This document shows positions 23,809 through 45,344 of a DNA stretch of 64,000 nucleotides, one piece after another. The DNA comes from Octopus sinensis (taxonomy: Eukaryota), in contig NC_042997.1 of NCBI RefSeq assembly GCF_006345805.1, positions 168,702,001 through 168,766,000 of the forward strand, in the 5' to 3' direction. The position numbers and the translations under genes are program-made. The number at the start of each line of letters is the position of its first letter. The first letter of the stretch is position 1. The notes beneath the pieces were generated by a model, which worked only from the letters and a program-made list of their open reading frames with translations, was not told the origin of the DNA and did not search any database.

Positions 23809-24021
23809 CCTTTCTACTGTAGGTACAAGGCCTGAAATTTTGGGGGAGGAGACTGGTCAATTACATGGACCCTATCATTTCACTGGTACTTAATTTATTG
23901 ACCTTGAAAGGATGAAAGGTAAAGTTGACTTTGGCAGAATTTGAACACAGAACATGAAGCTAGACAAAATACTGTTAAGTATTTTGCCCGGTGTGCTAAC
24001 AATTCTGCCAGCTTGCCACCT
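23809..24021 (-). mobile_element. SINE family C, degenerate; (AAT)n tract lies at its tail
   Basis: Similarity to family C; another copy at ~22625-22848. Confidence 0.7.
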
Positions 24022-24055
24022 TGTTGTTGTTGTTGTTGATGGTGATGATGATGAT

Positions 24056-24491: not shown

Positions 24492-25586
24492 GCAAAACAG
24501 CGACGGATAAAAGAGGAAATAAACAACCTTGGTGGAAAAGGAGAATTTCAGAAGATATAAACTCCTTGAACAGTGTAGGGTCAATATTTGTCAGGAAAAG
24601 AAATGCAGAACTTAAGAATGAGAGTACATTCAAAAAAGCTAGGAAGAAGCAGTTTTTTGAGGGAAGGGGACAAGTTGATTACATCAAACCCAGCACAGAA
24701 CTAGTTCTTATTTCATCAACCTTGAAAAGATTAAGGCAAAGGTAACCCCAGGGGAATTTGAATACAGAATGTAAAGATGAATGAAAAACCATATTAAGCT
24801 TTTTGTCCAATGCAATAATAATTGTCAGCTTGCCACCTTTCTAATAATGATGATAAATTCAAATTTATAATAATAGAAGAAAATATAATAAATTTTACTT
24901 TAATTTTGTAAGATAAATGATTGTATTAAAAGCTTAAGGCCAGTTCCAACATTTGGCAGAGAAATCTGTTATATATATATATATAATTTATGAACTAAAT
25001 GTGAGATACAAACCAAAGACAAAAAGTAGCTAAATTTGTTGAAATAATTTACTGTCTTCATGATAGGAAGAAGACAGTAGCTATATTACATGAATGGATA
25101 TGTTTTTGTTCTTTTTTTAAGATTTAGGAATATACCAGCTTCTACATACATCCGAAAAAAGAAAAAAAAAAAGACAAAATAACTGAATTTCAGGAGCTGG
25201 ACTAATTGACTATAATGCAGAAGATTGGTAGAGAGTCTATGTTAGCCATTCTGTGTCCTTAAACAAGTCTCATTATTCTACTTACTTTGCTTTGTCAAAA
25301 ATAATCATGTTTAATACCAATCTTAGTCGGGATTGTCTAGTTTTGTAAAGTTTTGTAGTAACATTAATTTGTAAATAATCAAAATCTACCCAACCATAAC
25401 ATTTATAATGGTTTCAAATTTTGGCACAAGGCAAACAATTTAGTAGATAAGTCAATTACACTGACTGCAGTAGCATTTGAACTCAGAATGTAAAGCTGGA
25501 AGAAGTGCTGCTAAGTATGTTGTCTGGCATACTAATGGTTCTGCCAGCTCATTGACCAAACTATTATATAGCATTTATAATAACTC

Positions 25587-25899
25587 TCTTTTTACTCTTT
25601 TACTTGTTTCAGTCATTTGCGGTCTCTTTTGCCAAACTGCTAAGTTACAGGGGACGTAAACACACCAGCATCGGTTCTCCAGTGACGTTGGGAGGGGGAC
25701 AAACACAAACACATATATATACATATACATAATACAATGGGCTTCTTTCAGTTTCCATCTACCAAATCCACTCACAAGGCTTTGGTCAGCCTGAGGCTAT
25801 AGTAGAAGACACTTGCCCAAGGTGCCATGCAGTGGGACTGAACTCGGAACCATGTGATTGGTAAACAAGCTACTTACCACACAGCCACTCCTGCACCTA
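25587..25899 (-). mobile_element. SINE family A with internal deletion
   Basis: Similarity to family A. Confidence 0.8.
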
Positions 25900-26959
25900 T
25901 GAGAAATAATAGGAATTTTTTTTTTTTAAACACAAAGTAATCCTAAAATTCTTCAATATCACTTTACAACTGCATATTACAATAGTCTTGATTTTTGAGA
26001 AAATGTTAAAATCAGTCACTCTAGAAATAACTGTAAAGCTCCAAGACTCTGGCTTACAAATTTGCTGTCTTCTCACTGAACTTCTGCTGCTATTAAAGTA
26101 AACACGAATTCCTTGAGCTGGCTGATCTTGTGTCAGTTGTACTTAGGTTTCACTGATCCATTCATCATTCCATTTCTCATAAGGTCCACCTTATTCACTG
26201 GTTTCTCCTCTACTCATTATCCACCAGGTCCTTCATTAACCATTTTCCCCCAGCCCTTTCTCCTTAGAATGCTGGTCCTCTTATGCTCTCTCCTAGCTCA
26301 TGTTTTTCCTGCAGCTATTGGCTTACAATTTTCCAAGTAGGACATCAATTGAGTAGCCCTAACAGCTCTCAGGGAGCCGCCAAAGGTCATCAGTACAGCT
26401 CCTTATTCCAGACAAATTCATTAAAAAATAAATCTTAAAACTGAAATTAATTTATTCTTGTGAAAAAGAGATGGTTAAGTAATGGTTTAATGATGAAAGA
26501 GAATTCAACATCAATGGAAATTAAAAGATTTCTTTAGATATTCAAATGAATCAATCATTCATTTTAGTAACTAATCAACTACTGGAATCTTTAATGTGAA
26601 TTTATTTGGAATATCAATAATTTTTACAGAATTTTGTTAACAGTATGTGTCTCTATAGAATTCATTCAAAGATATATCCAATATATAAATTGATGTATGT
26701 TTTACAAATTAGATATGCAAATATCTCATAAGCTGTCTTACATAAATATGTAAAATGATATGTTTGCATATCACAGAAAAGTAAAATAAGAACTTGATTT
26801 GAATAAATCATGAACTTATGGTAAACACACCAATGCACATCAAATCAAAAGTAATACAAAGTAGAATTGAAAATCCAGCTGCAAAATATTTGTGAATTAC
26901 CATGGAGATAAATGTAAGAAAGAAAATAAAAAACGAAATTAAAAGAAGACTAGGTTTGG

Positions 26960-27650
26960 CTAAATTTAATAATGGTTTAAAATTTTGGCACAAGGCCAGC
27001 AACTTCAGAGGAGGGGGTTAAGTTGATTATATTGAACCCAGTGCTCAACTAGTACTTATTTTATCAATCCCAGCAGCAACATTTGAACTCAGAATGTAAA
27101 AGCATATGAAATGCTGCTAAGCATTTTGCCCAGTGTGCTAACAATTCTTATTTCTTCATTGCCCACAAGGGGCTAAACATAGAGGGGACAAACAAGTACA
27201 GACAAAGGGATTAAGTCGATTAGATCGACGCCAGTGCGTAACTGGTACTTAATTTATCGACTCCGAAAGGATGAAAGGCAAAGTCGACCTCGGCAGAAAT
27301 TGACGTCAGAACGTAAAGACAGACGAAATACCTACTTCTTTATTACCCACAAGGGGCTAAACATAGAGGGGACAAACAAGAACAGACATAGGTATTAAGT
27401 CGATTACATCGACCCCAGTGCGTAACTGGTACTTAATTTATCGACCCCGAAAGGATGAAAGGCAAAGTCGACCTCGGCCGAATTTGAACTCACAGCGTAA
27501 CGGCAGACGAAATACTGCAAAGCATTTCACCCAGCTCGCCGCCTTTACTTACCACACAGCCACTCCTACACCGGTAAGCATTTTGTCCGGCATGCTAACG
27601 TTTCTGCCAGCTTGCCACCTTAATACTAACAATTCTGTCAGCTTGCTGCC
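26960..27650 (-). mobile_element. Cluster of tandem/nested family C SINEs
   Basis: Near-identical units at ~27151-27330 and ~27333-27543 plus degenerate flanking pieces. Confidence 0.8.
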
Positions 27651-27939
27651 ATAAGTTTAATCCAATACTGACCTCTAACACTGATACAAGGACACAAATT
27701 TCTTGGGAAGACATAGTCAATTAAATCACATTACAGTACTAAGCTGGTACTTCATTTTATCACCCACAGAAGGGTGAAAGATAAAGTTAATCATTGCAAC
27801 ATTTGAACTCAGAACATAAGGGTTGAAACTAAATACTGCAAAGCATTGTGTTTAACATACTACTGATTCAGTGAGGCCACTGCCCTTGTTAAATTCAACA
27901 AGTATTAAAAAGAAGAGAAGAAAGAAAAGAAATTCTTAC

Positions 27940-27982
27940 CTGTCTTGTGAAGTTTTTCATAAAATCTACACCAAAATATACT
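27940..27982 (-). CDS. Internal exon B2: VYFGVDFMKNFTRQ
   Basis: 43 nt (1 nt + 14 codons); strong donor CAG|GTAAGA; YFGV motif matches exon B1. Confidence 0.87.
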
Positions 27983-28832
27983 GTAGTGAAAAGGTTAAGG
28001 AATCCAATACAATTTATAAACAAACATTACAAGAACCATTAAAATAATAGAATGATTTCAATATATTAAATTGAAATAAAAACAAAATGTTGTCATCTTG
28101 TAAAACATAAATATATAATCACTTGTTCATTTGTTTTATATCTGTTTTTCCCATGCTGGTATGGGCGAGATGAATATAGTATTCAGACATTGTTTTATAG
28201 TCAGATACCATTCTTCATGCTAATCCTTTCTTGCTTTTCAAGTAAGGAATTTTTTACTGTACTTAGCTTCAAAGGTACAAAGCATGTAGGTGATCTATAG
28301 ACAGGAGAAATACCAACAGAATGTCACATAAATGACCATGTATGCATACATGCGAGTGCCCATGTGCACACATACTCTACAATAAGTTTCTTTCAGATTC
28401 TGTCTACCAATTCCACTCGTAAGGCTTTGATTGATCTGAGAAGCTTCAGTAGAAGACACTTGCCCAAGGTTCCACAGTGGGACTGAACCTGAAACCATGT
28501 GGTTGGGAAGCCATTTTCTTAACCATACAATCAGGCTTATGCTCCTTGATAAGAAATGTTTTAATGCAATAAAGACCTAAAATTTAATGTTTCTCTCGGG
28601 ACCCAGTCAAACGTAAAATCTGTCTGTTGTCAAAAATTCCCATCTATCTGGCTCAAAATCTCTCTCTCTCTCTCTCTCAAAGATCTTTTATTTCCTCAAC
28701 TCCTTTGTACATCTTTTAAACTAGACCAAAACTCTGTAATACTGAATAAGTCAAGATTCTCTTTCGTCAGAAAAATGCAAACAAGAGAAAAGACAGTTTT
28801 CCTTGTTTAAATCATAATTTATGGAAAGTAGA

Positions 28833-29087
28833 TAATGGTTTCCAAAGTGGGCAGTATTGCCCTCTGGGGGCAGTGGAAAGTTCCAAAGGGGCTTTGAAGA
28901 AAAGTGGGGTGATAATGGGGTAGTGATTCATATAAAAACAACAAAATAATGGGTTCATTAGGTTAAGTTTCATTTGTTAAATACAGTTGCTTTGAATTTG
29001 TTTGTAATGGTTAGCTGAGGTGGGGGTGCTAGGAATGTGGCCTGGGTGTCAAGGGGGCAGCAGCCTGAAAATGTTTAGGAACCACTG
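28833..29087. mobile_element. hAT (Charlie-like) MITE
   Basis: Left taatggtttccaaagtggg, right tttaggaaccactg, matching CAGTGGTTCCCAA-type termini; TSD not recoverable. Confidence 0.6.
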
Positions 29088-29327
29088 ATTGATAGATATA
29101 TGCTAACAGGTTTACATCTGATATATCTATAGTGATATTATCATCCAGGTATATTGGAAATTTTTTATATAATAAAACTGTATCATTGACTCTGAAAAGC
29201 CAGATTCACAGCTTTTCAGAGTCAATGATACAATTTTATTATATAAAAAATCTCCAATATACCTGGACTATAATAGCACTATAGATATATCAGATGTAAA
29301 CCTGTTAGCATATATCTGTCAATCAGT
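29084..29327. repeat. 117-bp-arm fold-back palindrome
   Basis: Arms 29084-29200 and 29211-29327, 10-nt loop cagattcaca, high identity. Confidence 0.9.
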
Positions 29328-29472
29328 TTTACATAGCGGCACAATGCATTAAGTAAACAAAGTATATTTGAGAGAAGACAGATAGGTAAATACAGAACCA
29401 GTATGAACATAGAGATTCTTCATATTATCAAATAAAATATAATTTCACAATAGCTAAATATAGAAAGGATAT

Positions 29473-29647
29473 GTCTTAAACTTCCCTTTTCTCTTCATAT
29501 GAATACTAGGGAACAAAAACCGCATTGCTCGATTGCACTGTACACCCCAATATTGTACACCAGGTTCCTCAATTTTCTGTCCTAATAATTGAAGGACCTC
29601 ATCACGTGAGATGCCCATGTCAAAGTCACCAGTCCAGAAAACAAGTT
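29473..29647 (-). CDS. Internal exon A2: (E)LVFWTGDFDMGISRDEVLQLLGQKIEEPGVQYWGVQCNRAMRFLFPSIHMKRKGKFK(T)
   Basis: Acceptor TTTATTTTACAG; 175 nt (2 nt + 57 codons + 2 nt); ends at U12 donor ATATCCTTTC; paralogous to exon A1. Confidence 0.9.
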
Positions 29648-30150
29648 CTGTAAAATAAATTACAATATATTAGAAAACAATTTTAAATATGTACTCAGTG
29701 TGTGTACATGCATAGGTATGAAGAAGTATTTATATATCTGTAGTCAGCCCAACTTTATATATGAAAATAACAGTGAAACATTTTCTAAAATGCATCATAG
29801 AATGTAAAGCTATTACCAGAATATATCATACTGAAGACATCTTTTGAGGGTAATTTAACCTGGCATAATGCGTCCACATTACAGGTTACTGAATATGGAT
29901 AGAAATGGCAACTTTAAATTGAAATGAAATAACTGAAACCAGGAATCAAACCTACTCACATGTTCAGCAAGCAAAGAGCTTATATTTATGCCAATATACT
30001 TACATGTGTGTGTGTGTGCGTGTATGTGTGCATGCATGTGTACATGTGTGTACAGCTCCTCAGCTTACCAGCCCTGGTCAAACCATCCAACCCATGCCAG
30101 CATGGACAATGAATGTTAAATGATGATGATATATCTAATATCTAATCTAA

Positions 30151-31768
30151 TCTAATATAATATATAAAACAGAGATGTGTGCGTATTCACTTTTCACGCG
30201 ATTTCATTTCAGTCCCTACAGTTTTGTGTTTTTCTGTGGTTAACGGTTTCTTTCTGGTTCCTTTGATACTGGCTCTTTGGTTCACTGGGCGACAAATTTC
30301 ACTTCAACAAGAAGGGCAAGAGAGGTGCAACAACATTTCCAGCATCAGGACGAACATTGTAGTGTCTCTACAAAAGATGCTGCATAACAACAACTTGATC
30401 AGAAACTTCAAGACTGCACTTGAAACAATTACACCTAACTCCATGGATTACAAGGTAGTTATCAGATCAGACAAGAAACCATCTGGTTAACATGGAGGGA
30501 GGTTTAATGCACCAACAGTAAATGAAATAGCTGTGTTTCTGGTTGGGCAAGAACATGACAAGAACGTGACATTGTACTCCATCTCAGAGACAGCACACTG
30601 GCAGACACAGTCCAACTACAAATGGAAGCTCCCAAAAATACCACACTCACAGCATTCTTCAAGCTCTGTGAAGATGATGAATTTGCTACAAGACTGCTAT
30701 ACAATGAAGTTCCACAATTCTATACCTGGTACCAAAACAAATGGAAAAGACGTGCACTTGGAGCACCCACACATCATCCATGAATCAAGAAATCAGACAC
30801 ACTCGGCAGAGTCTATGTTGTCCATCCCAGCTACTCAGAGTGCTACTATTTAAGGCTTCTATTACACCATGTCAAGGGACCCACATCATTTACAGCCTTA
30901 CGTATAGTTGATAACACAGTATGTCAAACATATTGCCAGGATTGCCATCTCAGAGGTCTTCTGGAAGATGATGCACTCTCACAGAGGCACAAATGTGCAA
31001 GTCTTCTATGCAACTGAGAAATCTCTTCTCCATCATGTGCAACTTGATGGGTGAGACTGTCTTCATTCCAAGGATACCTCTCATCTCAAATTATCTCCCC
31101 TTTCAGTTCAAGAGACTGCAGTTTCCTGTCAAACTTAGCTTTGCAATGTCTATCAACAAAGCACAAGGTCAATCTCTGAAGGTGGTGGGACTTAACCTCC
31201 TTCAACCTTGTTTCTCACATAGTCAGCTGTATGTATGTTGGATGTTCTAGTGTTGGAGATGAAAAGAACCTCTGAATTCTCAGTGATAAACATGGCACGA
31301 CAGAAAACACAGTATATGAAGAAGCACTTACATGAATAGAAGGTCCATGTCATATACAGAAGTGTAAAACCATTGAGTGTTAAAGTATTACTATTACACT
31401 TTCACTTTTCGCCTGACATGCGTGAATGTATATCTGTGTGTATAGAAGTGAAACAATAACGTGATATATTTGCTCTGTGTGTGTGTGTGTGTGTCTGTGC
31501 ATGCATATGTGTGTGTACTCTATGCACAGCCTTTTATTGTTTATAATCTGTACCTCTTTTTTAGACAAACGTGTATTTACTTTATATACATATATGAGTT
31601 GAAAACTTTCTTTTCACATTTCACTTAATGTCTAAGTTCCATGTTGGCATGGGTTGCAGAGTTGTGTAGAAAGCTGGTATCTCAGCTACTAGCAGTTGAG
31701 ACCTGCGTAAACCAGAGGGCATTTTAAAATTTCATTATTTTCTTTAACCCAAGCAACACCAGGTATTT
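30151..31768 (+). mobile_element. Internally deleted Helitron (Rep and PIF1-helicase remnants)
   Basis: Starts a|TCTAATATAATATATAAAA; reads GRFNAPTVNEIAVFLVG, HVKGPTSF...GLLEDD and FKRLQFPVKLSFAMSINKAQGQSLKVVGLNLLQPCFSHSQLYV, with stops and frameshifts; decayed 3' aacccaagcaacaccagg. Confidence 0.88.
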
Positions 31769-33204
31769 ATATATATATCATCATCATCCTCATCATCATT
31801 TAGCATCCGCTTTCCATGCTAGCATGGGTTGGACGGTTCAACTGGGGTCTGGGAAGCCAGAATATATATTCCATCAAAAGTTATGTATTTGCTTCAGAAT
31901 AATTCTAGTTTATGGAAGCATGAATACATTAATTATATATAAGAAAGAAAGAAGGGTATATTTTAAGGGATAAAAGATTTATAAGGACCTATGATGATTA
32001 TGATGATGAGGGTGCTGATGATAACGAGGGTGCTGAGGATAATGGGTGATGGTCACAGTGATTTATCACTAGACATATCTTTATGAAAATCAACAGGGAA
32101 AAATATACTTTCATTAAAGTTTGTTTCAATTGGGCAGAAAACAAAAAGCTAGAATGAAGACTGAGTAATTGAAAAATCTTTCATTTCTTTCATAATTCTG
32201 GTTTGGAATCTTATTGGTTAAATTAGCTTTTCATTTTTCAAGGTTCAATGATAAATGTCTAAAGAAGAGAGAGAGTAAAAGCCAATTAGCACAATCTTAT
32301 CTCTAGTCATAAGAACTGAGTTGTGTCTGAAAGCAAAACTTTGTTATTCTTCATATTTCAATTAAACTGCACCAATTAAATAGAGTTTAATTACATTCAA
32401 TCTACCCTATCATTCTAACCAAATCCTTTTTCAGAATTACTGAAGTCATTATTATTGTTTTCTCTCTTTAAACTATCTACAAAACTAACACAGGCAACAA
32501 AATACCTCTTTCCTTAATTAAGGTGATTAAGGAAGAATTATTAGCACCCTATATTTAGTACATTCATTCTATTTTATGCACCCTAGTATTTTAAGCTAAT
32601 GCTGTTTCAAGTGTGTACATCAATTTAATTGTAGCCTGGTTAGCTTCTGCACAAATCAGCAAATGTTTTGTTTACTACTTTCTATATTGAAGCAAGCATT
32701 TTGTGCTTGGCTCAGAGTGTCCAGAGTATTCATCACTGAGGAGACCAAACCAGGTTGAAACATTGTGTCTGATGATCCACTGGCATCCTGAGAAAAGCCC
32801 CATGTTTTTTTTAACAAACAAGTCACTTTGAAAAATTTCTCTGAAACAAATTATTACAGTTACTGTCATTTCCATCTGAGTGTACATATAAGCGTATATA
32901 TCACTGCATCACTTTATCAACCTGATTATTGGATGTTGTTATATACAAATGTTTCCTCACATTGTTAGATATCATGATAGCTACACAGACAGATGTATAT
33001 ATTCATATAAATGTATGTAGACGCACACTCCAATATTTTAATTTACTGTGGTTTCGAGTGTGTATATTTGATACAGCACGGTATTAATGCTAGGACACAA
33101 ATCAGTAAGTTTTTTAATTCATAAGTCTGATGTGGCTTTTATTTTGTCAAAATTTTTTTTTTAAGAAAGGAGAAAATGAAAATAAAAATGTAAGAAAATG
33201 AGAA

Positions 33205-33262
<58 letters not shown>

Positions 33263-33270
33263 AATAGTAC

Positions 33271-33401
33271 CTGGAAGAAACTGTAGGATCTTCTCCAGAT
33301 CTTGAGAAAGATCTCTCAGTGGCTGATAAGTCACATTCTCAGAGTCGCTTAGTTCTTCTTGTTCTTGCAATTGCTCTATAAGAGCCACACCAAAATAGTA
33401 C
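33271..33401 (-). CDS. Internal exon B1: YYFGVALIEQLQEQEELSDSENVTYQPLRDLSQDLEKILQFLP
   Basis: 131 nt (1 nt + 43 codons + 1 nt); AC acceptor after U12 branch site; donor CAG|GTACTA; phases match both neighbours. Confidence 0.88.
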
Positions 33402-34454
33402 GTTGTCAGCACATTAAGGAGAATTAGATCAATAATTATTGAGAAAAAAAGTACAACGGAAAAAAATACAATGGTAAAAAGGAATCAAGAAAGAAGGTTT
33501 TGATATAAATATCAATAATGTCCCTGATCCCTCAGTGATTTTCTTTTTTAGATCTTGTAACTTATCTCTTCCTGCAATGCTTCTTTAGATAATAGCACTT
33601 AACAAAATCAATCATCTATATGTAAAACTATGATCATGTTTTGAATATAAATTAGTCCAAAGAACGTACTACAAATAGAAATTTCTGGAACACTGAGCCT
33701 GAACCATAAACTTCATTATGGCATGCAGCAGTAGTAGTAATAATGGTGAGGATCATTTATAAAATTAGGTCAACTAACCAAGTTGTAGCTGTGACCATTA
33801 TTGTAGGAAACTATGGTATTTATACATCATTTATGCATCAGTAATGTTAAAGATAACATCAAGGGACAGTTAATAAGTGTCAGATTAAATACCAAGCTTA
33901 AAAATTTAATTCATGGAATCATTAGAGGAATAAATGACACAAAAATGTAGACAAATACATCTATTTTCTTTGCAACTAACACAGAAGCATACATGTAATT
34001 CAGTCAGTATAGGTCCAAGTATGGCTACATGGTAAGAAGTTTGCTTCCCAACCACATGGTTCTGGGTTGAGTCCCACTGCATGGTACCTTGGGCAAGTGT
34101 CTTCTACTATAGCTTTGAGCCAACCAAAGCCTTGTGAGTGGATTTGGTAAATGGAAACTGAAAGAAGCCCTTCATATATAATATATATATATATATATAT
34201 ATGACACGTAAAAAGCACCGTCCGAGCGTGGCAGATGCCAGCGCCGCATGGCTGGCGTCTGTATTGGTGACACGTAAAAGCACCAACCGATCATGGCCAT
34301 TTGCCAGCCCGCTCTGGCCCCTGTGCCGGAGGCACATAAAAAGCACCCACTACACTCACGGAGTGGTTGGCGTTAGGAAGGGTATCCAGCTGTAGAAACA
34401 CTGCCAAATCAGACTAGAGCCTGGTGCAGCCTCCATATATGTACACACACATAT

Positions 34455-34504
<50 letters not shown>

Positions 34505-34642
34505 ATATATACATATATATATGTGGAGGCACAATGGCCCAGTGGTTAGGGCAGCAGACACAGACACAGACACACACAATCAGAGTCTGCCATAAGTTGT
34601 CATAATACTAACAAAAACTGAAGCAGAATAATTCCATGCAAT

Positions 34643-34875
34643 AAAGCGGCAAGCTGGCAGAATCGTTAGCACACCAGGTAAAATGCTTAGTGCTATTTTG
34701 TCTGCCATTACGTTCTGAGTTCAAATTCTGCAGAAGTTGACTCTGCCTTTCATCCTTTCGGGTCAATAAATTAAGTACCAGTTACGCACTGGCATTGATG
34801 TAATCGACTTAATCCCTTTGTCAGTCCTTGTTTGTCCCCTCTATGTTTAGCCTCTTGTGGGCAGTAAAGAAATAA
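34643..34875 (+). mobile_element. SINE family C
   Basis: Plus-strand copy. Confidence 0.8.
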
Positions 34876-35455
34876 GAATAACTCCATGCAAATACTATAT
34901 TTTCACATAAAATAATATGAAGTTTGGCATATTCTATGTTTGAATTGTACTCCTGCTACAGCCAAATGTTTTCCTTGGATACCAATTTGTAAGTTTTGAT
35001 ACTTAAATTAGCTGTCAAGTTAGCAAATTCATTAGTTATTGTGACATACAATTACTGGAAGCTGGTGACATTACACTGGTAGACTACATTCTTGAGATAT
35101 TTTCATAAGAAAATCAGGAATGCTTGAGTGAGGAAGAGATTTGCAAGATGTTTCTTGGCATCTCATTCAGCAGTCAGTTAAAGCATGTTTAACGATGTTC
35201 TTGTTATGTTGATAAAATGAGGCATGCTGAGGTTTCCTGTTGGAAAGTACATTAGTCACAGACAAGTAATGTAAAAATTACAGGCCAGAAGTTATGTTAA
35301 CATCTGGTTATAACTTCAAAAAAAAAAAAAAAAAGAGATGTCCAATTACAAATAGAATTGGTAGTTCCAGTCCAAACATACACTCTAGAGCTAGCCACAG
35401 GTTTCATGTGTGCATATTCATATATGCATGTGTGTGTGTCTATATATATATTTAT

Positions 35456-35990
35456 GCAGGAGTGGCTGTGCAGTAAGAAACTTGCTTTCCAACCACATGG
35501 TTCCGGGTTCAGTCCCACTGTGTGGCACCCTGGGCAAGTGTCTTCTACTATAGCTTCAGATTGACCACAGTCTTGTGAGTGGATTAGGTAGATGGAAACT
35601 GAAAGAAGCCCGTCGTGTGTATATAATTATATATATATATATTGACCATTCATTTTTATACTTTTTGAGATCTAGTTATATGTTTTTTAAAAATATATAT
35701 TTGTTATTTATGTTTTTGTTGCATAATAGTGGTTTTTATCTCTAATTTATATTTTATATATATATATATATATATGTATGTATGCATTTGTGTATCTGTG
35801 TTTGTCCCCCTACTATCGCTTGACAATCACTGTTGGTGTGTTTACATACCGATAACAGAGTGGTTTGGCAAAAGAGACCGATAAAATAAGTACTAGGCTT
35901 GCAAAGAATAAGTCCAGGGGTTGATTTGCTCGACTAAAGGCAGTGCTCCAGCATAACCACCGCAGTCAAGTGACAGAAACAAGTAAAAGA

Positions 35991-35991
<1 letters not shown>
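35456..35991 (+). mobile_element. SINE family A with expanded AT-rich middle
   Basis: Head and tail both present. Confidence 0.8.
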
Positions 35992-36029
<38 letters not shown>

Positions 36030-36477
36030 CATACATACATAAAGATCATTATGTATGCATATATGTATGTGTGTGTGTCTGTATGTGTATGTATTTATAT
36101 GCATATATGTTTACACATACACATGGAGACATGTGGGCTTATGGTCAAGGTATTGGACTCATGATCATAAGATTGCAGATTCAATTCCTGGACTGGATGA
36201 TGGGTTGTGTTCTTCAGCAAAACACTTCATTTCATGTTGCTCTAATCCACTCAGTTGGCAAGAATCAGTAATCTGGCAACAGACTGGCATCCCATTCAGT
36301 TGGTAAATATATATATATGTCATAGAAACTGGGAAACCAGCCTAAGTCTGTAGGGCTCAAAAAGGCTGCTTGATCCTATTATCCTTCACACACACATCTG
36401 CATATCATAATAAATGTATCCATACCATTAGAAGGCATGATGCTGTGGAACTGTCTGAGATAAAAATTTCTTCTCTC

Positions 36478-36876
36478 TTTTACTCGCTTTTACTTGTTTC
36501 AGTCATTTGACTGTGGTCATGCTGGAGCACTGCCTTTAGTCGAACAAATTGACCCCAGGACTTATTCTTTGTAAGCCTAGTACTTATTCTATCAGTCTCT
36601 TTTGCTGAACCGCTAAGTTACTAGGACGTAAACACACCACCGTTGGTTGTCAAGCGATGTTGGGGGACAAACACAGACACACAAACATATACACACACAC
36701 ACATATATATATACATATATACGATAGGCTTCTTTCAGTTTTTGTCTATCAAATTGACTCACAAGGCTTTGATTGGCCTGAGGCTATAGTAGAAGACACT
36801 TGTCCAAGGTGCCACGCAGTGGGAATGAACCCGGAACCATGTGGTTGGTAAGCAAGCTATTCACAACATAGCCACA
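36478..36876 (-). mobile_element. SINE family A
   Basis: Full body. Confidence 0.85.
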
Positions 36877-38389
36877 AGCACAATATATACTAGAGCAAGA
36901 CAAACACAATCACTGCAGTGACTCACAGATGCAACACATGCATTTCACCTTTCTTGGGGCTTGTCAATGGCATGCACAAAATTGTCACCAGCTTAAACAA
37001 AATTCATGTTAAGATATATAGAAAGCAGTAAATAAAATATACACTGAATTATATTCCACCACTTCATTCCTTCTAGTGCTGTGTATACATTTAGTATGAT
37101 ACCCAAATGGCAATTTTAATTTAATGCTGGTTCAATTGTGTATACTAAGATTTTCTACAGCATAACATGTTTCCAGAATTCCGGTGAATTTTATTCACTG
37201 TTTTTGTTTCTCATATATGTCAAGGCATGAATTTCAATTAAGCAGGTGATGATTGAGTGCAAGACATTAACAAGCAATGCATCTGTCATTCTCAGAAGTC
37301 ACTGCAGCAATAATGCTTGTCTCACTCTGATATACATTGTGTTATTAACAAGACAAATCTATGAAGAGACGTACATCTTAGACAATTCCATAGCATCATG
37401 TATTCTAACAGTGGATATACATTACGTATGATACACAGATGGTGATTTTCACTTAATGTTGTTTTAATCATTTATGTCAAGTTGATACACACACACACAC
37501 ACACACACCAGTGTTATGTCATCAGTATTTACATGTCGGAATAACAATAACTGATGAATTTGCTGACTTCACAACTAATTTAAATGTCAAAACTTAAAAT
37601 TTGATATCCAAGAAAAAACTTTTAACTGTAGCAGGAGTACAATTCAAACATAGGATATACCAAATTTTCATGTTTTTATTTAATAAGAAAATATAGCTTT
37701 TGTATAGAAGTCTCCAACTTCAGTTTATATATATATAAACTGAAGTAGGAGCCCCGACTAGCTCCTGTGCTGGTCGCACATAAAAAGCACAATCTGAGCG
37801 TGGCTGATGCCAGTACCACCTGACTGCTTCCCATGCAGGTACCACATAAAAAGCACCCACTATACTATCGGGGTGGTTGGCATTAGGAAGGGCATCCAGC
37901 TGTAGAAACATTGCCAGATCAGACTGGAACCTGGTGAGACCTCCTGGCTTGCCAGTCCCTAGTCAAGCCGCTCAACCCATGACAGCATGGAAAACAGATG
38001 TTAAATGATGATGATGATGGTGAATGTCATGATAAAAATATAAACTAATTATTCTGTTTTGTTCTGCCCTCATATGTGTGTGCATGCGTGTGTATGTAAG
38101 TTTGTGTCTTTATACTTTCTGATAATTGCTCAGCTACAGGTAGTGATACTGCTGTCATTTTGCCTGTCAGCAAATAATGCACTTGTGCCTTCAATGATAT
38201 GAAATTAGACATCCTTTACTTGATAATTAGGGAAGGGTTAACGACAGGAAGTCGGACATCTGGCAGTAAGACAATACTTCAACAATCTATCTGGAAAATA
38301 GATTTAAAAGCAAACTAATGAATACACACACACACATGCCCTGCTGGATGGGTAATGTCAGTGTACATGCACAACATGTAAATGATTTA

Positions 38390-38970
38390 AGAAGAAAACT
38401 GCGTATAAGAGGCATCAGATGTTGTGTGTAAGAGAGAAGACTGCACTGGTTTGGTCAGGTGATGCCTATGGATGAGGACAGCTGCATTAAGCAGAAGTGC
38501 CAAGCTCTAATTGTGGAGGGTACTTGTGGAAGGAGTAGACATTGGAAAATGTAGGATGAAATGGCAAGAAAGGATCTTTGGGTGCTGGGCCTTACTAAGG
38601 AAATGGCCAGGAACCAGATGTGGTGATTTGCTGTACTTGATAAGACATATCAAGCTAAGTAAAATTGCTGTCTTCCACACATACAAGCTTCTCCTTTCAG
38701 GTGCCGGTGCCACTTAAAATGCAACTGTGTTGGTGCTGTGTTAACAGATTTCTGCCGGTACTGCATAAACACACCTGTTCCAGTGGCATGTAAAAAGCAC
38801 CTGGCACACTCTGTTAAGTGGTTGGCATTAGGAAGGGCATACAGCCATAGAAACCATGTCACAACAGACAGTTGGAGTTTGGACAGCTTCTTGCTAGCCA
38901 GCTCCATGTCAAACCATCCAACCCATGTCAGCATGGAGTGAAGACATTAAAAGATGATGATGATCATAAT
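38390..38970 (+). mobile_element. RTE-clade LINE 3' end with (GAT)n tail
   Basis: Reads RRLHWFGQVMPMDEDSCIKQKCQALIVEGTCGRSRHWKM*DEMARKDL..LGLTKEMA, then the tail ending gacattaaaagatgatgatgat. Confidence 0.8.
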
Positions 38971-38981
38971 ATATATATACA

Positions 38982-39400
38982 GGCGCAGGTGTGGCTGTGG
39001 TAAGTAGCTTGCTTACCAACCACATGGTTCAGTCCCATTGCATGGCACCTTGGGCAAGTGTCTTCTACTATAGCCTCAGGCCAACCAAAGCCTTGTGAGT
39101 GGATTTGGTAGATGGAAACTGAAAGAAGCCCGTTGTATATATATATGTGTGTATATATATATATATAGAGAGATATGTATGTATGTGTGTGTACATGTTT
39201 GTGTGTCTGTGATTGTCCCCCCAACATCGCTTGACAACCGATGCTGGTGTGTATACATCCCCGTCACTTAGCAGTTCGGCAGGAGAGACCGATAGAATAA
39301 GTACTAAGCTTACAAAGAATAAGTCCTGGGGTCGATTTGCTCAACTAAAGGCAGTGCTCCAACGTGGCCGCAGTCAAATGACTGAAACAAATAAAAGAAT
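38982..39400 (+). mobile_element. SINE family A
   Basis: Full body. Confidence 0.85.
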
Positions 39401-41872
39401 ATATATATATATATATATCCTCATCATCATTTAGCATTAACTTTTCCATGCTGGTAGGGGTCAGACAGAATTTGTAAAGGCAAATTTTCTACATCTGGAT
39501 GCCCTTCCTGTCAGCAACCCTCACCTACTTCCATATATGGTAATATTTCTCCATGACCAGACATGTTTACACAGAAGAATTACATAATTGTTTCTGTGCA
39601 ATGATAAATCTACATTTAAAAGTTCTAGAAAATATGAAATTCACCACTGAATACTAAATACAACAAACACAAAGGCAAAGGATGTGGACATAGGTACAAA
39701 CACAACTTTCACCACCCTCACCACCAGTAGCAGATAAACCACCATAAAAACTACTACCTTCACTCTGACCACCACCATTACTGCTATAAGAATTACAGAA
39801 GCCACATGAGGGAGTGCTGAAAAGTTCTTGGCTTTGGGTAAAAGAAAATACAAGAGTATCAGTTAATTATGATTTTTACTCAACATATTCCCCTCTTAGA
39901 TTCACACATTTATTGCAGTGGTTCTTCAGTTTTTCTAAGCCATGTAAAAGAATTCGCAAGGTTGGGCCTCTGACCAGGCCTTTTGTGATACCTTTAAGGC
40001 CAGGAACTTTTCAACACCACCTCATATCATCATCATCATCATCATCATCGTTTAACATCTGCTCTCCATGCTAGCATGGGTTGGACGATTTTGACTGAGG
40101 GTTGACGAACCAGATGGCCGCACCAGGCTCCAATCTTGATCTGGCAGAGTTTCTGCAGCTGGATGCCAGAAAGAGGAAGGAATTGAGGCTATTGAAAGAA
40201 CATCACCAGCTAAATTACCCCACCCCCAAGAAAAAGTTCTAAGATAAAAATTGATAAGGTAACTAGCAATTTCAACAACCTGTAGCTACTATATACAAAA
40301 CATGTTTGCGCAGACAAAGAGTGACTAGGATGGACTAACATTAGACACACCCAAAACCCTGTCAAAGCTATAATATATGGGAGCCTATTCCTGTCCATAA
40401 ATCACATTGAAGTAATAAAGTTTCAACCTACAAGTATACATATGAAATGCAATACAGTGCAATGTATCAAAAATAAAAGTAGAATCCCTGAACAACAGGT
40501 GGTAATATATACGCCTGAAGTGGACACAATGCAAACAGCTTTCTGATACCATGAAACAATGAACAGATTTCAGCAACAGAGTAACAAAAGAATTTCTTAA
40601 ACTGCATTTAGAAGGTGGTGGAACAGGTGCCCTAGATACAACAGACACAAAGCCATGTACTTCAGCACACAAGGTTACTTCAACTGTTAAACCCAGGATG
40701 TTGACTCAATACACAATTTCCTTATATTAAATGAGCTATACTTTTTAAATATCTGAGGGGTTTTTCCATGACTAACTAGAGTAAATTACCTCCTGTCTAT
40801 GTCTCTACCTGAAAGATCTTGTCACATGCAAGGAGGTGATATGCAGAGAACATATAGAAACAGATCAGCTAACAAACACATCAGATGTAGAACTATACAT
40901 ATTAAAATATGTCTGCTTTTGTTTTGATAAGAAAGTAAGAAACTACATGGAGCTGCTATGTATTTGCATGAAGATGTAATACCAAAAGCGGTGTTGCCAC
41001 ACCCAAACGCTGTTTGTGACACAAAGAAAAATTTAACATGGTTATGCAAAAAAACATAACACTCAACACATTGCCCACAAGATACCTTAAACAACAACAC
41101 AAAATTTGAGAAAAGTTTTAGACAGGAGCAGCAATAACCAGTTTGAATCAACATGCCAATGAATTCATATTGAGTGGCTTTAATATTTCAAACCTCAAGT
41201 AGACAAAAGGCTATATTCTATTGAGAAAACAACAGCATGATTGCAGGTCAGCTGTTTCTGCTTAACCTCATGGGCATGATGTCCAAATATGTTACTATAT
41301 AAGAGATCCCTGATGGTCAATTAATGCAAAAATGATCCACAATATTTTGTTGTAGTTTGGGAGGGTCATTATGCCAATAATAAATACATGCACTGGTTCT
41401 GTTTCACTTCTGTGTTATTTGTCAATTGGTTAATTATATTACCATTTAACTAGATGATTTTTTGATTAATCATTTAGGGTTGTCAAAGTCCTTTTGCTAC
41501 CATTCACAATCTGATCAATGACATTCCCTCTTTACTCATGTCTGCTTCACCTGAAGTACAGAGAGCAAACCATTGCTGAGGTTGCAAATGGTAACCTAAC
41601 TGATTTACTGATTAGCTGAATGATCATAAAACAACTTATTAATAAATTGGTTAAATAGTTAATCAATTGTCAAATAAAAAATAAAGAAGTGAAATATAAC
41701 TAGTGCATGTATTTCCTATTAGCATAATGACCCTCCCAAGATACAGCAAAATATGCTTCAACCCACAATTTCACATCAAGATTCTTGCAAACCAAACACA
41801 AAAATGAAAATGATCCTCAATATGACTTGCATAATATTTATTCTCTGACTATATTGTAGTCAAATTAATATA

Positions 41873-42297
41873 GGCGTAGGAGTAGCTGTGTGGTAAGCAG
41901 CTTACTTACGAACCACATGGTTCCAGGTTCAGTCCCACTGCATGGCACCTTGGGCAAGTGTCGTCTACTATAGCCTCGGGCCAACCAAAGCCTTGTGAGT
42001 GGATTTGGTAGACGGAAACTGAAAGAAGCCCATCGTATATATATATATATATATGTTTGTGTGTGTTTGTGTGTGTGTGTGTGTGTCTGTGTTTGTCCCC
42101 CCCCCCCAACATCGCTTGACAACCGATGCTGATGTGTTTACGTCCCTGTAACTTAGCAATTTGGCAAGAGAGACCGATAGAATAAGTAGTACTAGGCTTA
42201 CAAAGAATAAGTCCTGGGGTCGATTTGCTCAACTAAAAGCGGTCCTCCAGCATGGCCACAGTCAAATGATTGAAATAAGTAAAAGAGTAAAGAGTAA
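41873..42297 (+). mobile_element. SINE family A
   Basis: Full body with (aaaagagt) tail. Confidence 0.85.
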
Positions 42298-42648
42298 TGT
42301 TTGTCCAAAGAAACTTTTGGCTCAGTACCTAACAAAAATGCACTCCAATCATTTCTAACAAATATCCACAAGGCTTAATGAAAACCAATTCAATAGAATC
42401 TTGATTCATGTATGTGACTCTAAATTCTACACACTTAAGAATGTTTCAAATACCTTTATAATTTGTATTAGGGAATAAAAAAAAACACAAAGATGCATTT
42501 AAAATTACAATAATACAAATATGTACAAGAGCAACTGTACACACACATATATGCATATATTAATATTCATAAGCTAATAAACAATAGGTATTTATATAAA
42601 TCTTAAAATACTTCTTTTTTTTTTTTCAATGTGGAACAAAAAGGATAT

Positions 42649-42817
42649 TTCTTGAACTTCCCTTTCCTCTGAGCCATACTGCTCGGAAACTCTTCTCTCA
42701 CAGCCTTGTTACATGCTGGTCCCCAATGAACCATTTCTGGAATGTTCAGCAGCATACTAATTTTCTGAAGAAGTAGGTCACGTGATACATAACCTTTAGC
42801 ACAGCCAACTAATAACT
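42649..42817 (-). CDS. Internal exon A1 of tandem RFX-like winged-helix protein: (E)LLVGCAKGYVSRDLLLQKISMLLNIPEMVHWGPACNKAVREEFPSSMAQRKGKFK(K)
   Basis: Acceptor TTCATTATTTTCAG; 169 nt open (2 nt + 55 codons + 2 nt); ends at U12 donor ATATCCTTTT; homologous to exon 29647-29473. Confidence 0.9.
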
Positions 42818-43613
42818 CTGAAAATAATGAAGTGAAATTAATTTAAAAAACAAAAAAAAAACTTGATAAATAGCAAAAAAAATAATGCTCTTTTCTGATT
42901 GAAATTTTAAATATTTTAATCAATAAATTAGTGCTAACATGCTATCTTAAAAAGAGAGGGTTGGCAATAATAAAGTATTCCTTCTCCCTAAGCATGTAAA
43001 CTAGCTTTGAAAGATCAATTCATCATTTCTCGGAATTATCTTCCTTTACTTTGTATGTTACTTATAATAGCTGCCAGGATTTTTTCTGTCTCTCAAAGGG
43101 AAATTTCAATTATTTAGGACATTTTTTGTTTACCATTTAACTTCTATTCACAGAGATTATTTAAACATATGCCTGATGGGTTAAATAGTAAAATAATCAA
43201 ATGAGGGCACAAGAGGGTGAATTACAGAGAAGGTGCTGAGAATCATTGAAAGAAAGGATTCCTAATTATTTGGAAGCATTTACAGTTGTTTTGTAACCCC
43301 AGGCCAGCTGTGATTCAGTAAGGTTATTATAAAAGTATTCCAGCCATGACGATCTAAAATGTGAAGCAGTGGAGAGAGAATAAACACAAAGAGACACAGA
43401 TATAACCACAAATATACATGCAAACAAGGGGTGGAGGCACATGGCTTAAAAGTTAGGATGTTGGACTCATGATCGGAAGATTGTGGTTTCAGTTCTTGGA
43501 GTGGGCAATGCATTGAATTCTTAAGCAAAACACTTCATTTCACATTGCTCCTGACCACTCAGCTGGTAAAAATGAATAATCCTGTGATATGGACTAGCAT
43601 CTAATACAGGGAA

Positions 43614-43649
<36 letters not shown>

Positions 43650-44529
43650 TGGCTTGGCTTCATGAACAAATATCAGGAAGGCTGTCCACGTCGTGTGCAT
43701 GCACACTCATGTCTGACAAGTCCTCTTGTGTCTCTTGTCTTTAAACGCGTCTCTTCTTTGTTCCTCAGACTCGCTGACTGCGTTGAAGATCGTGTGGAGC
43801 CAAAAAGCACCCACTACACTCACGGAGTGGTTGGGGTTAGGAAGGGCATCCAGCAGTAGAAACACTGCCAGATCAGACTAGAGCCTTACAGCCTCCTAGC
43901 TTCCCAGACCCCGGTCGAACCGCCCAACCCATGCTAGCATGGAAAGCGGACGTTAAACGATGATGATAATCATCATCATGTTACAGTATTCAATTTGGTG
44001 AATAAAATATAATTTTTTTAAAAACTATTATTAATACAAATTTAGTCAGAAACTGTTTTTGTATTAGAGTAAACGGAAACACACACATTCATGGGCAGTG
44101 GGCCATGGTTATCCGGAATGTGGTGCTGGTACCACCAACAGCCAGCAGTAACCAGAAATATGTAAGACAGCAAAACAATGTAAGATGGTATACATATGTA
44201 TGTGTATGCAAGTATGTGTGCATATAGTTGCGTGTGTCTGCATGTGAGAGTCTGTTCTTTTATATATATGTGTGTTATCATTTGACGACACACCTACCAC
44301 TTTAGCCAAAGTAGCAGAGGAATTTGAGTATGTTTTTAACTTCATAGTTGAGTGCGCAATTGTAGGAGTACATCCAAAGATGCCCCACAGAGTAAATTAT
44401 ATACCCCAGTTCATATGTTAATGTCAACATTTACACAAGTTTCCACCAATTAACAATCATATATGTTCTATGTAATAAGAATAAATAAACATCAGATTGA
44501 GTGCATACATATCTGTGTATGTGTGTATG

Positions 44530-44574
<45 letters not shown>

Positions 44575-44703
44575 TTACTGAGACCATAAATACTAGGTTG
44601 GTATCTAGTACAAGATAACTCACCTCATGGGTAGATAGTCACTATTTTGTTCTGGCTGGCAAATTATCTAGGAGATGGAAAATTCTTACAAGAACACAAC
44701 TAT

Positions 44704-44764
<61 letters not shown>

Positions 44765-45214
44765 TACATATATATAAATATGTATAGGAATGTATATGTG
44801 TATATATGTATGTATGTATATATATTGTATATATATGCATATATATATACACATGTACACATGCACACATACACACACGTACACATGCTGTTACTAGCTA
44901 TATGGTTTATTTCATGGTAGTTATGAAGTTTGATTCCGATACATAACACTACAATTTCTATATATAATAGCTATTAATAATACTATTCATACATTGGTTA
45001 GTGTGGAGTTCCTCATTGAAAGCCACTGCAATGAGGACTCCTTGCTTGTTAGATTAAGGATTTAAATTTAGGTGGCAGAAGTTCTAGGGGTTGCTTTGGT
45101 GCAGTTATCAGAATTTATGGCAGATATTCAATTCTTGTAGTTGATCATATAAACCTTTTCCATCTGATATATATACATATATACACACACACATATATAC
45201 ATATATATACATAT

Positions 45215-45344
45215 ATTTATTTTATAGAAGGAGCTTCTACAGGACTAGAACTGTTTCATTCAAAAGAAATCATCAGTAAGCTCTGATGATTTCTTTTGAA
45301 TGAAACAGTTCTAGTCCTGTAGAAGCTCCTTCTATAAAATAAAT
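45215..45344. ncRNA. Perfect 62-bp-arm palindrome with hammerhead-like core
   Basis: Arms 45215-45276 and 45283-45344; CTGATGA 45283-45289, stem II ttc-tttt-gaa, GAAAC 45302-45306, GTC 45314-45316; stem I cut at the junction. Confidence 0.6.

What the first reader, a model, noticed from the sequence alone, without database searches (positions are those of the whole stretch)
27940..42817. Two AT-AC minor-spliceosome introns at the same codon of a duplicated domain
Seen: both domain repeats are encoded as [phase-1 GT-AG intron]-exon A-[phase-2 AT-AC intron]-exon B. Both minor introns fall right after RKGKFK, with donors ATATCCTTT, branch sites TCCTTAAT / TTCCTTAACC about 10-12 nt upstream, and AC acceptors. 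Splicing both gives one continuous frame (KFKKYYFGV; KFKTVYFGV). Known: U12 introns are rare, AT-AC ones are the minority of them, and they are often rate-limiting. Inference: an exon-U12 intron-exon module was duplicated within the gene and both copies kept the AT-AC class, so expression needs two minor-splicing events. Skipping from donor 1 to acceptor 2 would be in frame and give a one-repeat chimera (A1+B2), so repeat number could be set by minor-intron splice choice. GT-AG-only gene predictors would mis-annotate this locus.
Basis: partly seen in the sequence, partly recalled or inferred. Interest (0 to 1): 0.9.

Follow-up and report, generated by a model that had tools for sequence, protein, structure and literature searches.

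The report
Two conserved AT-AC minor introns, duplicated domain
An octopus zinc-finger gene has two copies of a DNA-binding-like domain, and each is split at the same codon by a rare AT-AC minor-spliceosome intron; this is real and over 500 million years old, but RefSeq already annotates it and it follows known rules of minor-intron evolution.

Summary
On the minus strand, two homologous exon pairs are each split after the second base of the codon following RKGKFK. Both introns start ATATCCTTT, carry a TCCTTAAY branch site 9-12 nt before an AC acceptor, and lack a polypyrimidine tract.

The window is Octopus sinensis. The gene is RefSeq XP_029643444.1, a 1085-aa C2H2 zinc-finger protein misnamed as a kinase.

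Its second junction is unsupported.

Both AT-AC introns are also present in abalone and scallop, and a mussel-like contig has the first complete plus the second's donor. Two gastropod-like lineages switched intron 1 to the GT-AG U12 subtype. The brachiopod Lingula kept intron 1 and lost intron 2. The two repeats also share the upstream phase-1 intron position, so an exon-intron module was duplicated before molluscs and brachiopods split.

AlphaFold and Foldseek give tandem winged-helix domains, closest to RFX, with the intron in the wing hairpin.

No annotated isoform supports the proposed donor-1-to-acceptor-2 chimera.

Verdict: a new example of a known kind, of moderate interest.

The parts
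42818..64000 (-). 3' part of the ~35.9-kb U2-type phase-1 intron between coding exon 1 (aa 1-842, about 14.7 kb beyond the window's high end) and exon A1
   Evidence: tblastn of P0013 on the whole-gene locus L011 and mapping of the window onto L011; acceptor ...ttattttcag|AG
42649..42817 (-). Exon A1 (169 nt): helices of winged-helix repeat 1, ending ...AQRKGKFK + AA
   Evidence: 100% identical to XP_029643444.1 aa 843-899
33405..42648 (-). U12-type AT-AC intron 1 (9244 nt, phase 2). 5'ss ATATCCTTT at 42648..42640; branch site TCCTTAAT at 33420..33413; main acceptor AC at 33406..33405; alternative acceptor AC at 33403..33402 (isoform X2, minus Thr900)
33271..33404 (-). Exon B1 (134 nt): second wing strand of repeat 1, acidic linker and N-terminal helix of repeat 2 (...ILQFLP + G)
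29648..33270 (-). U2-type GT-AG intron, phase 1 (CCAG|gtacta ... ttttacag|AA). Its position is homologous to the intron before exon A1
29473..29647 (-). Exon A2 (175 nt): helices of winged-helix repeat 2, ending ...MKRKGKFK + AC
27986..29472 (-). U12-type AT-AC intron 2 (1487 nt, phase 2). 5'ss ATATCCTTT at 29472..29464; branch site TTCCTTAAC at 28003..27995 (the core TCCTTAAC is 28001..27994); acceptor AC at 27987..27986.
27940..27985 (-). Exon B2 (46 nt): T + TVYFGVDFMKNFTRQ, ends in phase 0
19934..27939 (-). U2-type GT-AG intron, phase 0 (CAG|gtaaga ... ttttgcag|ATT)
19727..19933 (-). Last coding exon: IPHTFESDQMMFIKSEPIDD...TSETNP, with stop TGA at 19729..19727

Best explanation
The feature is the 3' half of an Octopus sinensis gene, RefSeq XP_029643444.1. 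It encodes a mollusc/brachiopod C2H2 zinc-finger protein with two tandem winged-helix domains of RFX-like fold.

Each domain is encoded by the same module:
- a phase-1 U2 intron after a conserved '..LP';
- exon A, which encodes the helices and the first wing strand;
- a phase-2 U12-type AT-AC intron inside the wing beta-hairpin;
- exon B.

Both minor introns descend from a single U12 intron in the ancestral one-domain unit. It was copied, together with the upstream intron, by an intragenic tandem duplication before molluscs and brachiopods diverged.

Since then the introns have followed the known fates of U12 introns:
- retention as AT-AC in cephalopod, vetigastropod and bivalves;
- an AT-AC to GT-AG subtype switch of intron 1 in Pomacea-like and another gastropod-like lineage;
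- precise loss of intron 2 in Lingula.

Full-length mRNA therefore needs two U11/U12-dependent splicing events. In Octopus the first intron has two in-frame AC acceptors 3 nt apart, which give isoforms with and without one Thr in the wing.

Shown here: the sequence signals, repeat paralogy, shared intron positions, orthologous conservation, and spliced products in annotated proteins and assembled mRNA contigs. Inferred: dependence on the minor spliceosome, any rate-limiting role, and DNA binding by the domains.
For: Signals and paralogy:
- Donors, branch sites and acceptors were read directly.
- The only two RTATCCTTT in the window are these two donors.
- Branch-A to 3'ss distance is 9-12 nt in all 12 intron versions tabulated, and all have [A/G]TATCCTT.
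- R1 vs R2: 44% identity over 62 aa, no gaps, E 6e-18, with the intron at the same column.
- A 20-row single-domain alignment places the upstream phase-1 intron after the same LP column.

Identity and products:
- 100% match to XP_029643444.1. X1/X2 isoform pairs in O. sinensis and O. bimaculoides differ only by the Thr at junction 1.
- The whole-gene locus L011 gives the exon map.
- Cephalopod mRNA contig L015 (Logan SRR25158134) is collinear with the five window exons. Its breakpoints fall at 42649 | about 33404 and at 29473 | about 27985, each within 1-2 nt because adjacent alignment blocks overlap or stop short.
- mRNA contig L012 and the related genomic contig L013 show the same intron removed in another mollusc.

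Orthologous genomic loci:
- Haliotis L010 and Mizuhopecten L009 have both AT-AC introns.
- Lingula L008 has R1 AT-AC and R2 intronless.
- Mytilid-like L001 has R1 AT-AC and an R2 AT donor.
- Pomacea-like L007 has R1 GTATCC...CAG and R2 AT-AC.

Fold and context:
- AF2 mean pLDDT 82.7 shows two H-strand-H-H-H-hairpin units.
- Foldseek top hits are the RFX5 and RFX1 DNA-binding domains, TM 0.68 and 0.60.
- Molluscs, including O. sinensis, are known to be relatively rich in minor introns (PMC10639083).
Against: - I could not inspect any RNA-seq read from O. sinensis itself. RefSeq X1/X2 models are taken as transcript-supported by inference only.
- The branch-A to 3'ss distance of 9 nt at the conserved acceptors is at the short end of what I recall as typical for U12 introns (about 10-15 nt).
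- Dependence on U11/U12 snRNPs is inferred from consensus only.
- No relative outside molluscs and brachiopods was found, so the pre-duplication single-domain state is unobserved.
- The RFX likeness is fold-level only, with Foldseek E 5e-3 and no Pfam or PDB sequence hit.
Confidence: 0.88

Rival explanations
1. Parallel gain: the domain was duplicated without the intron (or as cDNA-like sequence), and U12 introns later inserted independently at the same proto-splice site in each repeat.
For: Lingula has the intron in repeat 1 only. On its own this could be read as a later gain in repeat 2 on the mollusc branch. The exon context AAG AA/AC at both sites is similar.
Against: - Two intron positions and phases, not one, are shared by the repeats: phase 1 after LP and phase 2 after KFK.
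- Comparative work reports U12 gain as extremely rare, with one clear case among 18 metazoan genomes, whereas loss is common (PMC2831892).
- The Lingula repeat-2 exon is an exact fusion, KGKLKTTYYYG, as expected for intron loss.
Confidence: 0.06
2. Regulated repeat number: the U12 donor of repeat 1 can pair with the U12 acceptor of repeat 2. This would skip exons B1 and A2 and make a one-domain chimera, so minor-splice-site choice would set domain number.
For: - Both introns are phase 2 and of the same class, so the join is in frame and spliceosome-compatible: AA|TACAGT gives KFK-N-TVYFGV (sequence).
- There is a precedent. In vertebrate JNK genes a duplicated exon carries a U12 5'ss that skips to the next U12 3'ss (PMC1874599).
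Against: - No annotated isoform or assembled transcript in any of about 90 retrieved proteins has an A1+B2 join.
- The only variants seen are the +/-Thr tandem acceptor, models that read through a U12 intron, and a Haliotis rufescens X2 model that drops repeat 2 through a different, non-U12 junction after exon B1.
- Both repeats are conserved in every full-length orthologue.
Confidence: 0.05
3. The introns are not minor-spliceosome substrates. They would be U2-dependent AT-AC introns, as in some sodium-channel genes, or annotation artefacts.
For: U2-type AT-AC introns exist (PMC2831892). No direct snRNP-dependence data exist for this gene.
Against: - Position +5 is C within ATATCCTTT. The U2-type AT-AC introns have G at +5.
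- A near-perfect TCCTTAAY lies 9-12 nt from the 3'ss and there is no polypyrimidine tract.
- Where the termini changed to GT-AG, the U12 consensus GTATCCTT plus CCTTAAY was kept.
- Spliced mRNA contigs confirm the junctions.
Confidence: 0.02

Closest known systems
U12-type (minor, AT-AC subtype) spliceosomal introns in general
   Same: 5'ss ATATCCTT, branch site TCCTTAAC close to the 3'ss, no polypyrimidine tract, non-zero phase, deep conservation, subtype switching and loss.
   Different: Nothing mechanistic differs. The branch-to-acceptor spacing (9 nt) is short, and in Octopus two ACs 3 nt apart are both annotated as acceptors.
Genes and families with several U12 introns inherited through duplication (voltage-gated Na+/Ca2+ channel alpha subunits, E2F, MAPK families)
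   Same: U12 introns are retained at the same position in duplicated coding units. Most mammalian SCN and CACNA1 genes have two U12 introns (PMC2831892; PMC6865273).
   Different: Here the duplicates are two adjacent domains inside one small gene, and both are AT-AC at the very same codon. In the channels I could not verify that the two U12 introns occupy homologous positions of the internal repeats, because Wu & Krainer 1999 is not held.
JNK (MAPK8-10) exons 6a/6b: tandem exon duplication carrying a U12 5' splice site
   Same: An exon with its U12 donor was tandemly duplicated. Splice choice among duplicated U12/U2 sites is constrained by spliceosome compatibility (PMC1874599).
   Different: In JNK the intron between the copies is a U12/U2 hybrid that forces mutually exclusive exons. 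Here each copy kept a complete U12 intron, and both copies are included in every full-length model.
NAGNAG tandem acceptors of U2 introns
   Same: Two acceptors 3 nt apart give isoforms that differ by one residue (Thr900 present or absent).
   Different: The dinucleotides are AC...AC on a U12 intron. The second AC is simply the conserved Thr codon ACN, so this may be splicing noise rather than regulation.
RFX-type winged-helix DNA-binding domain (RFX1 1dp7, RFX5 8zjr)
   Same: Best structural matches of the predicted domain. A motif of the type ..FP....RR.G.RG..KY.YYG resembles the RFX helix-3 and wing region (the RFX pattern is from my memory of the sequence, not a tool result).
   Different: No Pfam RFX_DNA_binding hit and no PDB sequence or profile hit. 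The similarity is fold-level only. The domain is present in tandem and joined to C2H2 fingers.

Membership tests
U12-type intron, AT-AC subtype | 5' splice site /ATATCCTT (C at +5, no G) | tested here: met
   42648..42640 and 29472..29464 are both ATATCCTTT
U12-type intron, AT-AC subtype | Branch site TTCCTTRAY close (about 10-15 nt) to the 3' splice site, with no polypyrimidine tract | tested here: met
   CTCCTTAAT and TTCCTTAAC. Branch A is 9 nt from the conserved AC (12 nt from the downstream AC). The spacer sequences GTGCTGAC and CTTTTCAC are not pyrimidine tracts
U12-type intron, AT-AC subtype | Intron ends in AC and its removal restores the conserved reading frame | tested here: met
   RefSeq proteins, 12 orthologues and mRNA contigs L015 and L012 read KK-T-[YF][YF]FG and K[TS]-T-x[YF]xG across the junctions
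U12-type intron, AT-AC subtype | Orthologous introns keep U12 signals (conservation or subtype switch) | tested here: met
   Haliotis, Mizuhopecten, Lingula (R1), L001, L007 and L013
U12-type intron, AT-AC subtype | Splicing requires U11, U12, U4atac and U6atac snRNPs | not testable with these tools
   Needs snRNA knock-down or a minigene assay
Intragenic tandem duplication of an exon-intron module | The two units are paralogous at the protein level | tested here: met
   BLASTP E 6e-18, 44% identity, ungapped. 13 invariant columns across 20 repeat sequences
Intragenic tandem duplication of an exon-intron module | Intron positions and phases coincide in the two units | tested here: met
   Phase 1 after LP and phase 2 after KFK+2 nt in both units
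Intragenic tandem duplication of an exon-intron module | An unduplicated relative carries the same intron | tested here: inconclusive
   No single-domain relative was found. All hits are molluscs or Lingula and already have two repeats
RFX-type winged-helix DNA-binding domain | Winged-helix fold superposable on the RFX DBD | tested here: met
   AF2 domain cores are mostly pLDDT >90. Foldseek rank 1 is RFX5 (prob 1.00, TMt 0.68); RFX1 has TMt 0.60
RFX-type winged-helix DNA-binding domain | Sequence-profile match to Pfam RFX_DNA_binding or to RFX chains in the PDB | tested here: not met
   No Pfam family at E<=1. No RFX among PDB hits with a single sequence or a profile

The most novel reading that the evidence does not exclude
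Splice-site choice among the duplicated minor-intron signals might be used biologically. Two routes are conceivable. The tandem AC acceptors of intron 1 could add or remove one Thr in the putative DNA-contacting wing. Alternatively, donor-1-to-acceptor-2 splicing could make a single chimeric winged-helix domain. Either would make the output of this putative transcription factor depend on minor-spliceosome activity. The +/-Thr isoform is annotated in two Octopus species, but nothing shows it is more than noise. The chimera has no support.
Probability: 0.07. Interest if true: 0.6.

Novelty: new member of a known kind. Interest (0 to 1): 0.3.

Why it matters
- The locus is a compact natural example that shows, in one gene, almost every documented fate of a U12 intron. 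These are inheritance through internal duplication, retention as AT-AC for more than 500 million years, AT-AC to GT-AG subtype switching, and precise loss.
- It shows concretely how GT-AG-only pipelines truncate, split or internally delete a conserved gene across many mollusc genomes. It also gives corrected junctions.
- It defines an undescribed lophotrochozoan protein family, C2H2 fingers plus tandem RFX-like winged helices, that has no Pfam model and a misleading RefSeq name.
- It does not change what is understood about minor splicing.

Tried and rejected
- Pfam on the two repeats and on the whole protein gave no family.
- PDB sequence and profile searches gave only chance hits: His-tRNA ligase and CCT gamma.
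- tblastn of orthologous zinc-finger exons on the window found nothing, because coding exon 1 lies outside the window.
It was rerun without that row.
- Wu & Krainer 1999 is not held, so the ion-channel precedent for homologous positions is unverified.
- Literature searches for intragenic duplication of U12 introns, and for tandem AC acceptors, found no direct precedent.
- The Nucella gene look-up found nothing on record.
- A single-domain profile search found no new phyla and no single-domain relative.
- Motif counts alone (RTATCCTTT 2 vs 1.7 expected; TCCTTAAY 8 vs 6.4) are not enriched. The significance comes from their positions, not their number.

Full report
**1. Observation**

I read the four junction regions on the minus strand and re-derived the exons.
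- Exon A1 (42817..42649) follows ...ttattttcag and ends ...AGG AAA GGG AAG TTC AAG AA|ATATCCTTTTTG.
- Exon A2 (29647..29473) follows ...ttattttacag and ends ...AAA GGG AAG TTT AAG AC|ATATCCTTTC.
- Upstream of the B exons lie TCCTTAAT (33420..33413) and TTCCTTAACC (28003..27994). Each is followed within 9-12 nt by AC dinucleotides and has no pyrimidine tract.

Chance does not explain this.
- RTATCCTTT occurs exactly twice on both strands of the window, against 1.73 expected. TCCTTAAY occurs 8 times, against 6.4 expected. So the counts themselves are unremarkable.
- However, the only two donors fall at the same position of the same codon in two ORFs that are 44% identical over 62 ungapped residues, E 6e-18.
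- Each donor is matched by a branch site next to an in-frame AC.

**2. What the gene is**

A full-library HMMER search with the spliced 172-aa segment found a 1085-aa protein that is 100% identical, plus 11 long orthologues.
- Cluster look-ups name it XP_029643444.1 of Octopus sinensis. Its RefSeq name, 'probable serine/threonine-protein kinase DDB_G0282963', is a misnomer; no kinase or other Pfam domain is found.
- Orthologues are 'uncharacterized' proteins in O. bimaculoides, Haliotis, Gigantopelta, Pomacea, Littorina, Nucella, Lottia, Mizuhopecten, Pecten, Mya, Pinctada, Sinanodonta and the brachiopod Lingula.
- Later searches added Mytilus and Solemya and found no other phylum.
- The gene locus (L011) shows coding exon 1 (aa 1-842, with widely spaced C2H2 fingers) about 14.7 kb beyond the window.
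- A 35.9-kb intron follows, then five small exons that all lie in the window: A1, B1, A2, B2 and a last exon at 19933..19727.

**3. Correction of the acceptors**

- All full-length proteins read KK-T-[YF][YF]FG and K[TS]-T-x[YF]xG across the two junctions.
- In the window this requires the upstream AC of each ACNAC pair: ...GCTGAC|AACGTAC (first exon base 33404) and ...TTTCAC|TACAGTA (first exon base 27985).
- For intron 1 both choices are annotated. Isoforms X1 and X2 of O. sinensis (1085 and 1084 aa) and of O. bimaculoides (1091 and 1090 aa) differ only by this Thr.
- For intron 2 only the upstream AC is annotated.
- An assembled mRNA contig from another cephalopod (L015, Logan SRR25158134, about 80% nt identity) is collinear with the five window exons. 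Its breaks fall at 42649 | about 33404, 33271 | 29647, 29473 | about 27985 and 27940 | 19933, each within 1-3 nt because adjacent alignment blocks overlap or stop short.

**4. Class of the introns**

Table:

| Taxon / locus | Intron 1 (repeat 1) | Intron 2 (repeat 2) |
|---|---|---|
| O. sinensis (window) | AT-AC, 9244 nt | AT-AC, 1487 nt |
| Haliotis cracherodii (L010) | AT-AC, 3237 nt | AT-AC, 1240 nt |
| Mizuhopecten yessoensis (L009) | AT-AC, 456 nt | AT-AC, 278 nt |
| Mytilid-like contig (L001) | AT-AC, 961 nt | ATATCC donor; contig ends before the acceptor |
| Pomacea-like contig (L007) | GTATCCTTC...CCTTAAC...CAG, 716 nt (GT-AG U12 subtype) | AT-AC, 956 nt |
| Unidentified mollusc (L013; its mRNA relative is L012) | GTATCCTTT...TCCTTAAT...TAG | ATATCC donor |
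| Lingula anatina (L008) | AT-AC, 498 nt | No intron; KGKLKTTYYYG is contiguous |

- Every version has [A/G]TATCCTT and CCTTRAY 9-12 nt from the 3' end.
- C at +5 argues against the U2-type AT-AC class described for sodium-channel genes (PMC2831892).
- Many further genomic ORF fragments end ...KGK[FY]K[KTAS]YP[FLS]. That is the read-through translation of [A/G]TATCC, so the donor is widespread.

**5. Origin**

- The homology of the repeats extends upstream of the A exons: WKMLKIKEVLP|E versus DLEKILQFLP|E.
- The phase-1 intron therefore falls after the same LP column in both repeats.
- Two shared intron positions, together with the rarity of U12 gain and the frequency of loss, favour one explanation. 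A genomic module that already contained the U12 intron was duplicated before the mollusc-brachiopod split, and Lingula later lost intron 2.
- Independent insertion remains formally possible but unlikely.

**6. The protein domain**

- AlphaFold2 on a 10-sequence alignment gave mean pLDDT 82.7, with a disordered acidic linker.
- The model has two units of helix, strand, three helices and a beta-hairpin, which is the winged-helix pattern.
- Foldseek against the PDB ranks the RFX5 and RFX1 DNA-binding domains first among single-domain matches (prob 1.00 and 0.96; TM 0.68 and 0.60). Other winged-helix and tandem winged-helix proteins follow.
- E-values are weak and there is no sequence-level link. 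I therefore call it RFX-like in fold only.
- Both U12 introns interrupt the wing hairpin, at the start of its second strand.

**7.

- Two minor-splicing events are required. This follows from the structure.
- 'Rate-limiting' is untested. RefSeq models of Pecten maximus and Littorina saxatilis, and Pomacea PVD22450, read through intron 2. This could reflect retained-intron transcripts or annotation failure.
- The donor-1-to-acceptor-2 chimera is in frame, and JNK exon 6a/6b offers a mechanistic precedent. However, none of the retrieved proteins or transcripts shows it.
- The only repeat-2-less model, Haliotis rufescens X2, uses a different junction after exon B1.
- The prediction that GT-AG-only predictors would fail is well borne out:
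  - Truncation at donor 1: O. vulgaris, Lottia, Sinanodonta, Pinctada, and the 852-aa O. bimaculoides UniProt model.
  - Split genes: O. bimaculoides UniProt entries and Pinctada.
  - Internal deletions of the wing: Mytilus edulis, Solemya and Mya WAR30976.

**8. Comparison and novelty**

- The introns meet every sequence-testable criterion of U12-type AT-AC introns.
- Inheritance of U12 introns through duplication, subtype switching, loss and mis-annotation are all established phenomena.
- Molluscs, including O. sinensis, are known to be comparatively rich in minor introns.
- RefSeq already models these junctions.
- Two things appear undescribed in the searched literature. One is the specific case: two AT-AC introns at the same codon of adjacent internal repeats, with all three evolutionary fates visible across lophotrochozoans. 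The other is the protein family itself.
- I rate it a new member of a known kind, with interest about 0.3.

Noticed in passing
window 32730..32775 (+): Type I hammerhead ribozyme match (Rfam RF00163, 36.1 bits against a gathering score of 34). The CUGA-GA / GAAAC / GUC core is intact. It lies inside the B1-to-A2 intron on the opposite strand and may be a relic of a retroelement such as a Penelope-like element or retrozyme (the link to those elements is from memory).
   Followed up: partly
window 60953..61240 (+): Fragment of a mariner-type transposase (Pfam Transposase_1, E 1.2e-16), inside the large first intron of the gene.
   Followed up: partly
window, many sites, e.g. 531..794, 13762..14022, 34000..34218, 36657..36851, 38964..39227, 41906..42232, 53423..53608: A dispersed short repeat whose spurious ORFs all read ...HSQGFGWPEAIVEDTCPRCHAVGLNPEPCGW... 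It looks like a high-copy SINE-like element and fills the introns on both strands.
   Followed up: no
window 22784..23860: About 1 kb of A+T-only trinucleotide-type microsatellite. ORFs from it are made almost entirely of N, I, Y and L runs.
   Followed up: no
window 33402..33406 (-); proteins P0013/P0063 and P0064/P0068: Tandem AC acceptors 3 nt apart on a U12 intron, annotated as two isoforms (with and without Thr900) in both O. sinensis and O. bimaculoides. This is an AC-AC analogue of NAGNAG. I found no paper describing such a case.
   Followed up: partly
L008 (Lingula anatina LFEI02000011.1) 5382..5630: Repeat 2 of the Lingula orthologue is encoded without the U12 intron (exact exon fusion), while repeat 1 keeps an AT-AC intron.
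   Followed up: yes
L007 2850..3590 and L013 295..605: In a Pomacea-like snail and in another mollusc, intron 1 is GTATCCTT...AG (U12 GT-AG subtype) while intron 2 stays AT-AC. This is a subtype switch confined to one of the two paralogous introns.
   Followed up: yes
RefSeq and GenBank models of orthologues (P0016, P0021, P0020, P0027, P0036, P0042, P0025, P0049, P0065, P0069, P0082, P0086, P0087, P0088): Widespread mis-annotation at the two U12 sites: truncation, gene splitting, read-through (…KTYPF…) or in-frame deletion of the wing. In addition, the RefSeq product name 'probable serine/threonine-protein kinase DDB_G0282963' for the octopus protein has no support.
   Followed up: partly
window 30993..31250 (+) and 47975..49142 (-): ORFs that look to me like a helicase tail (…MSINKAQGQSLKVVGLNL…) and a GIY-YIG-like motif (…VVYCISCSFCPSLYIGQTG…), suggesting transposon remnants. 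Pfam gave no hit at E<=0.01, so this is unconfirmed.
   Followed up: partly
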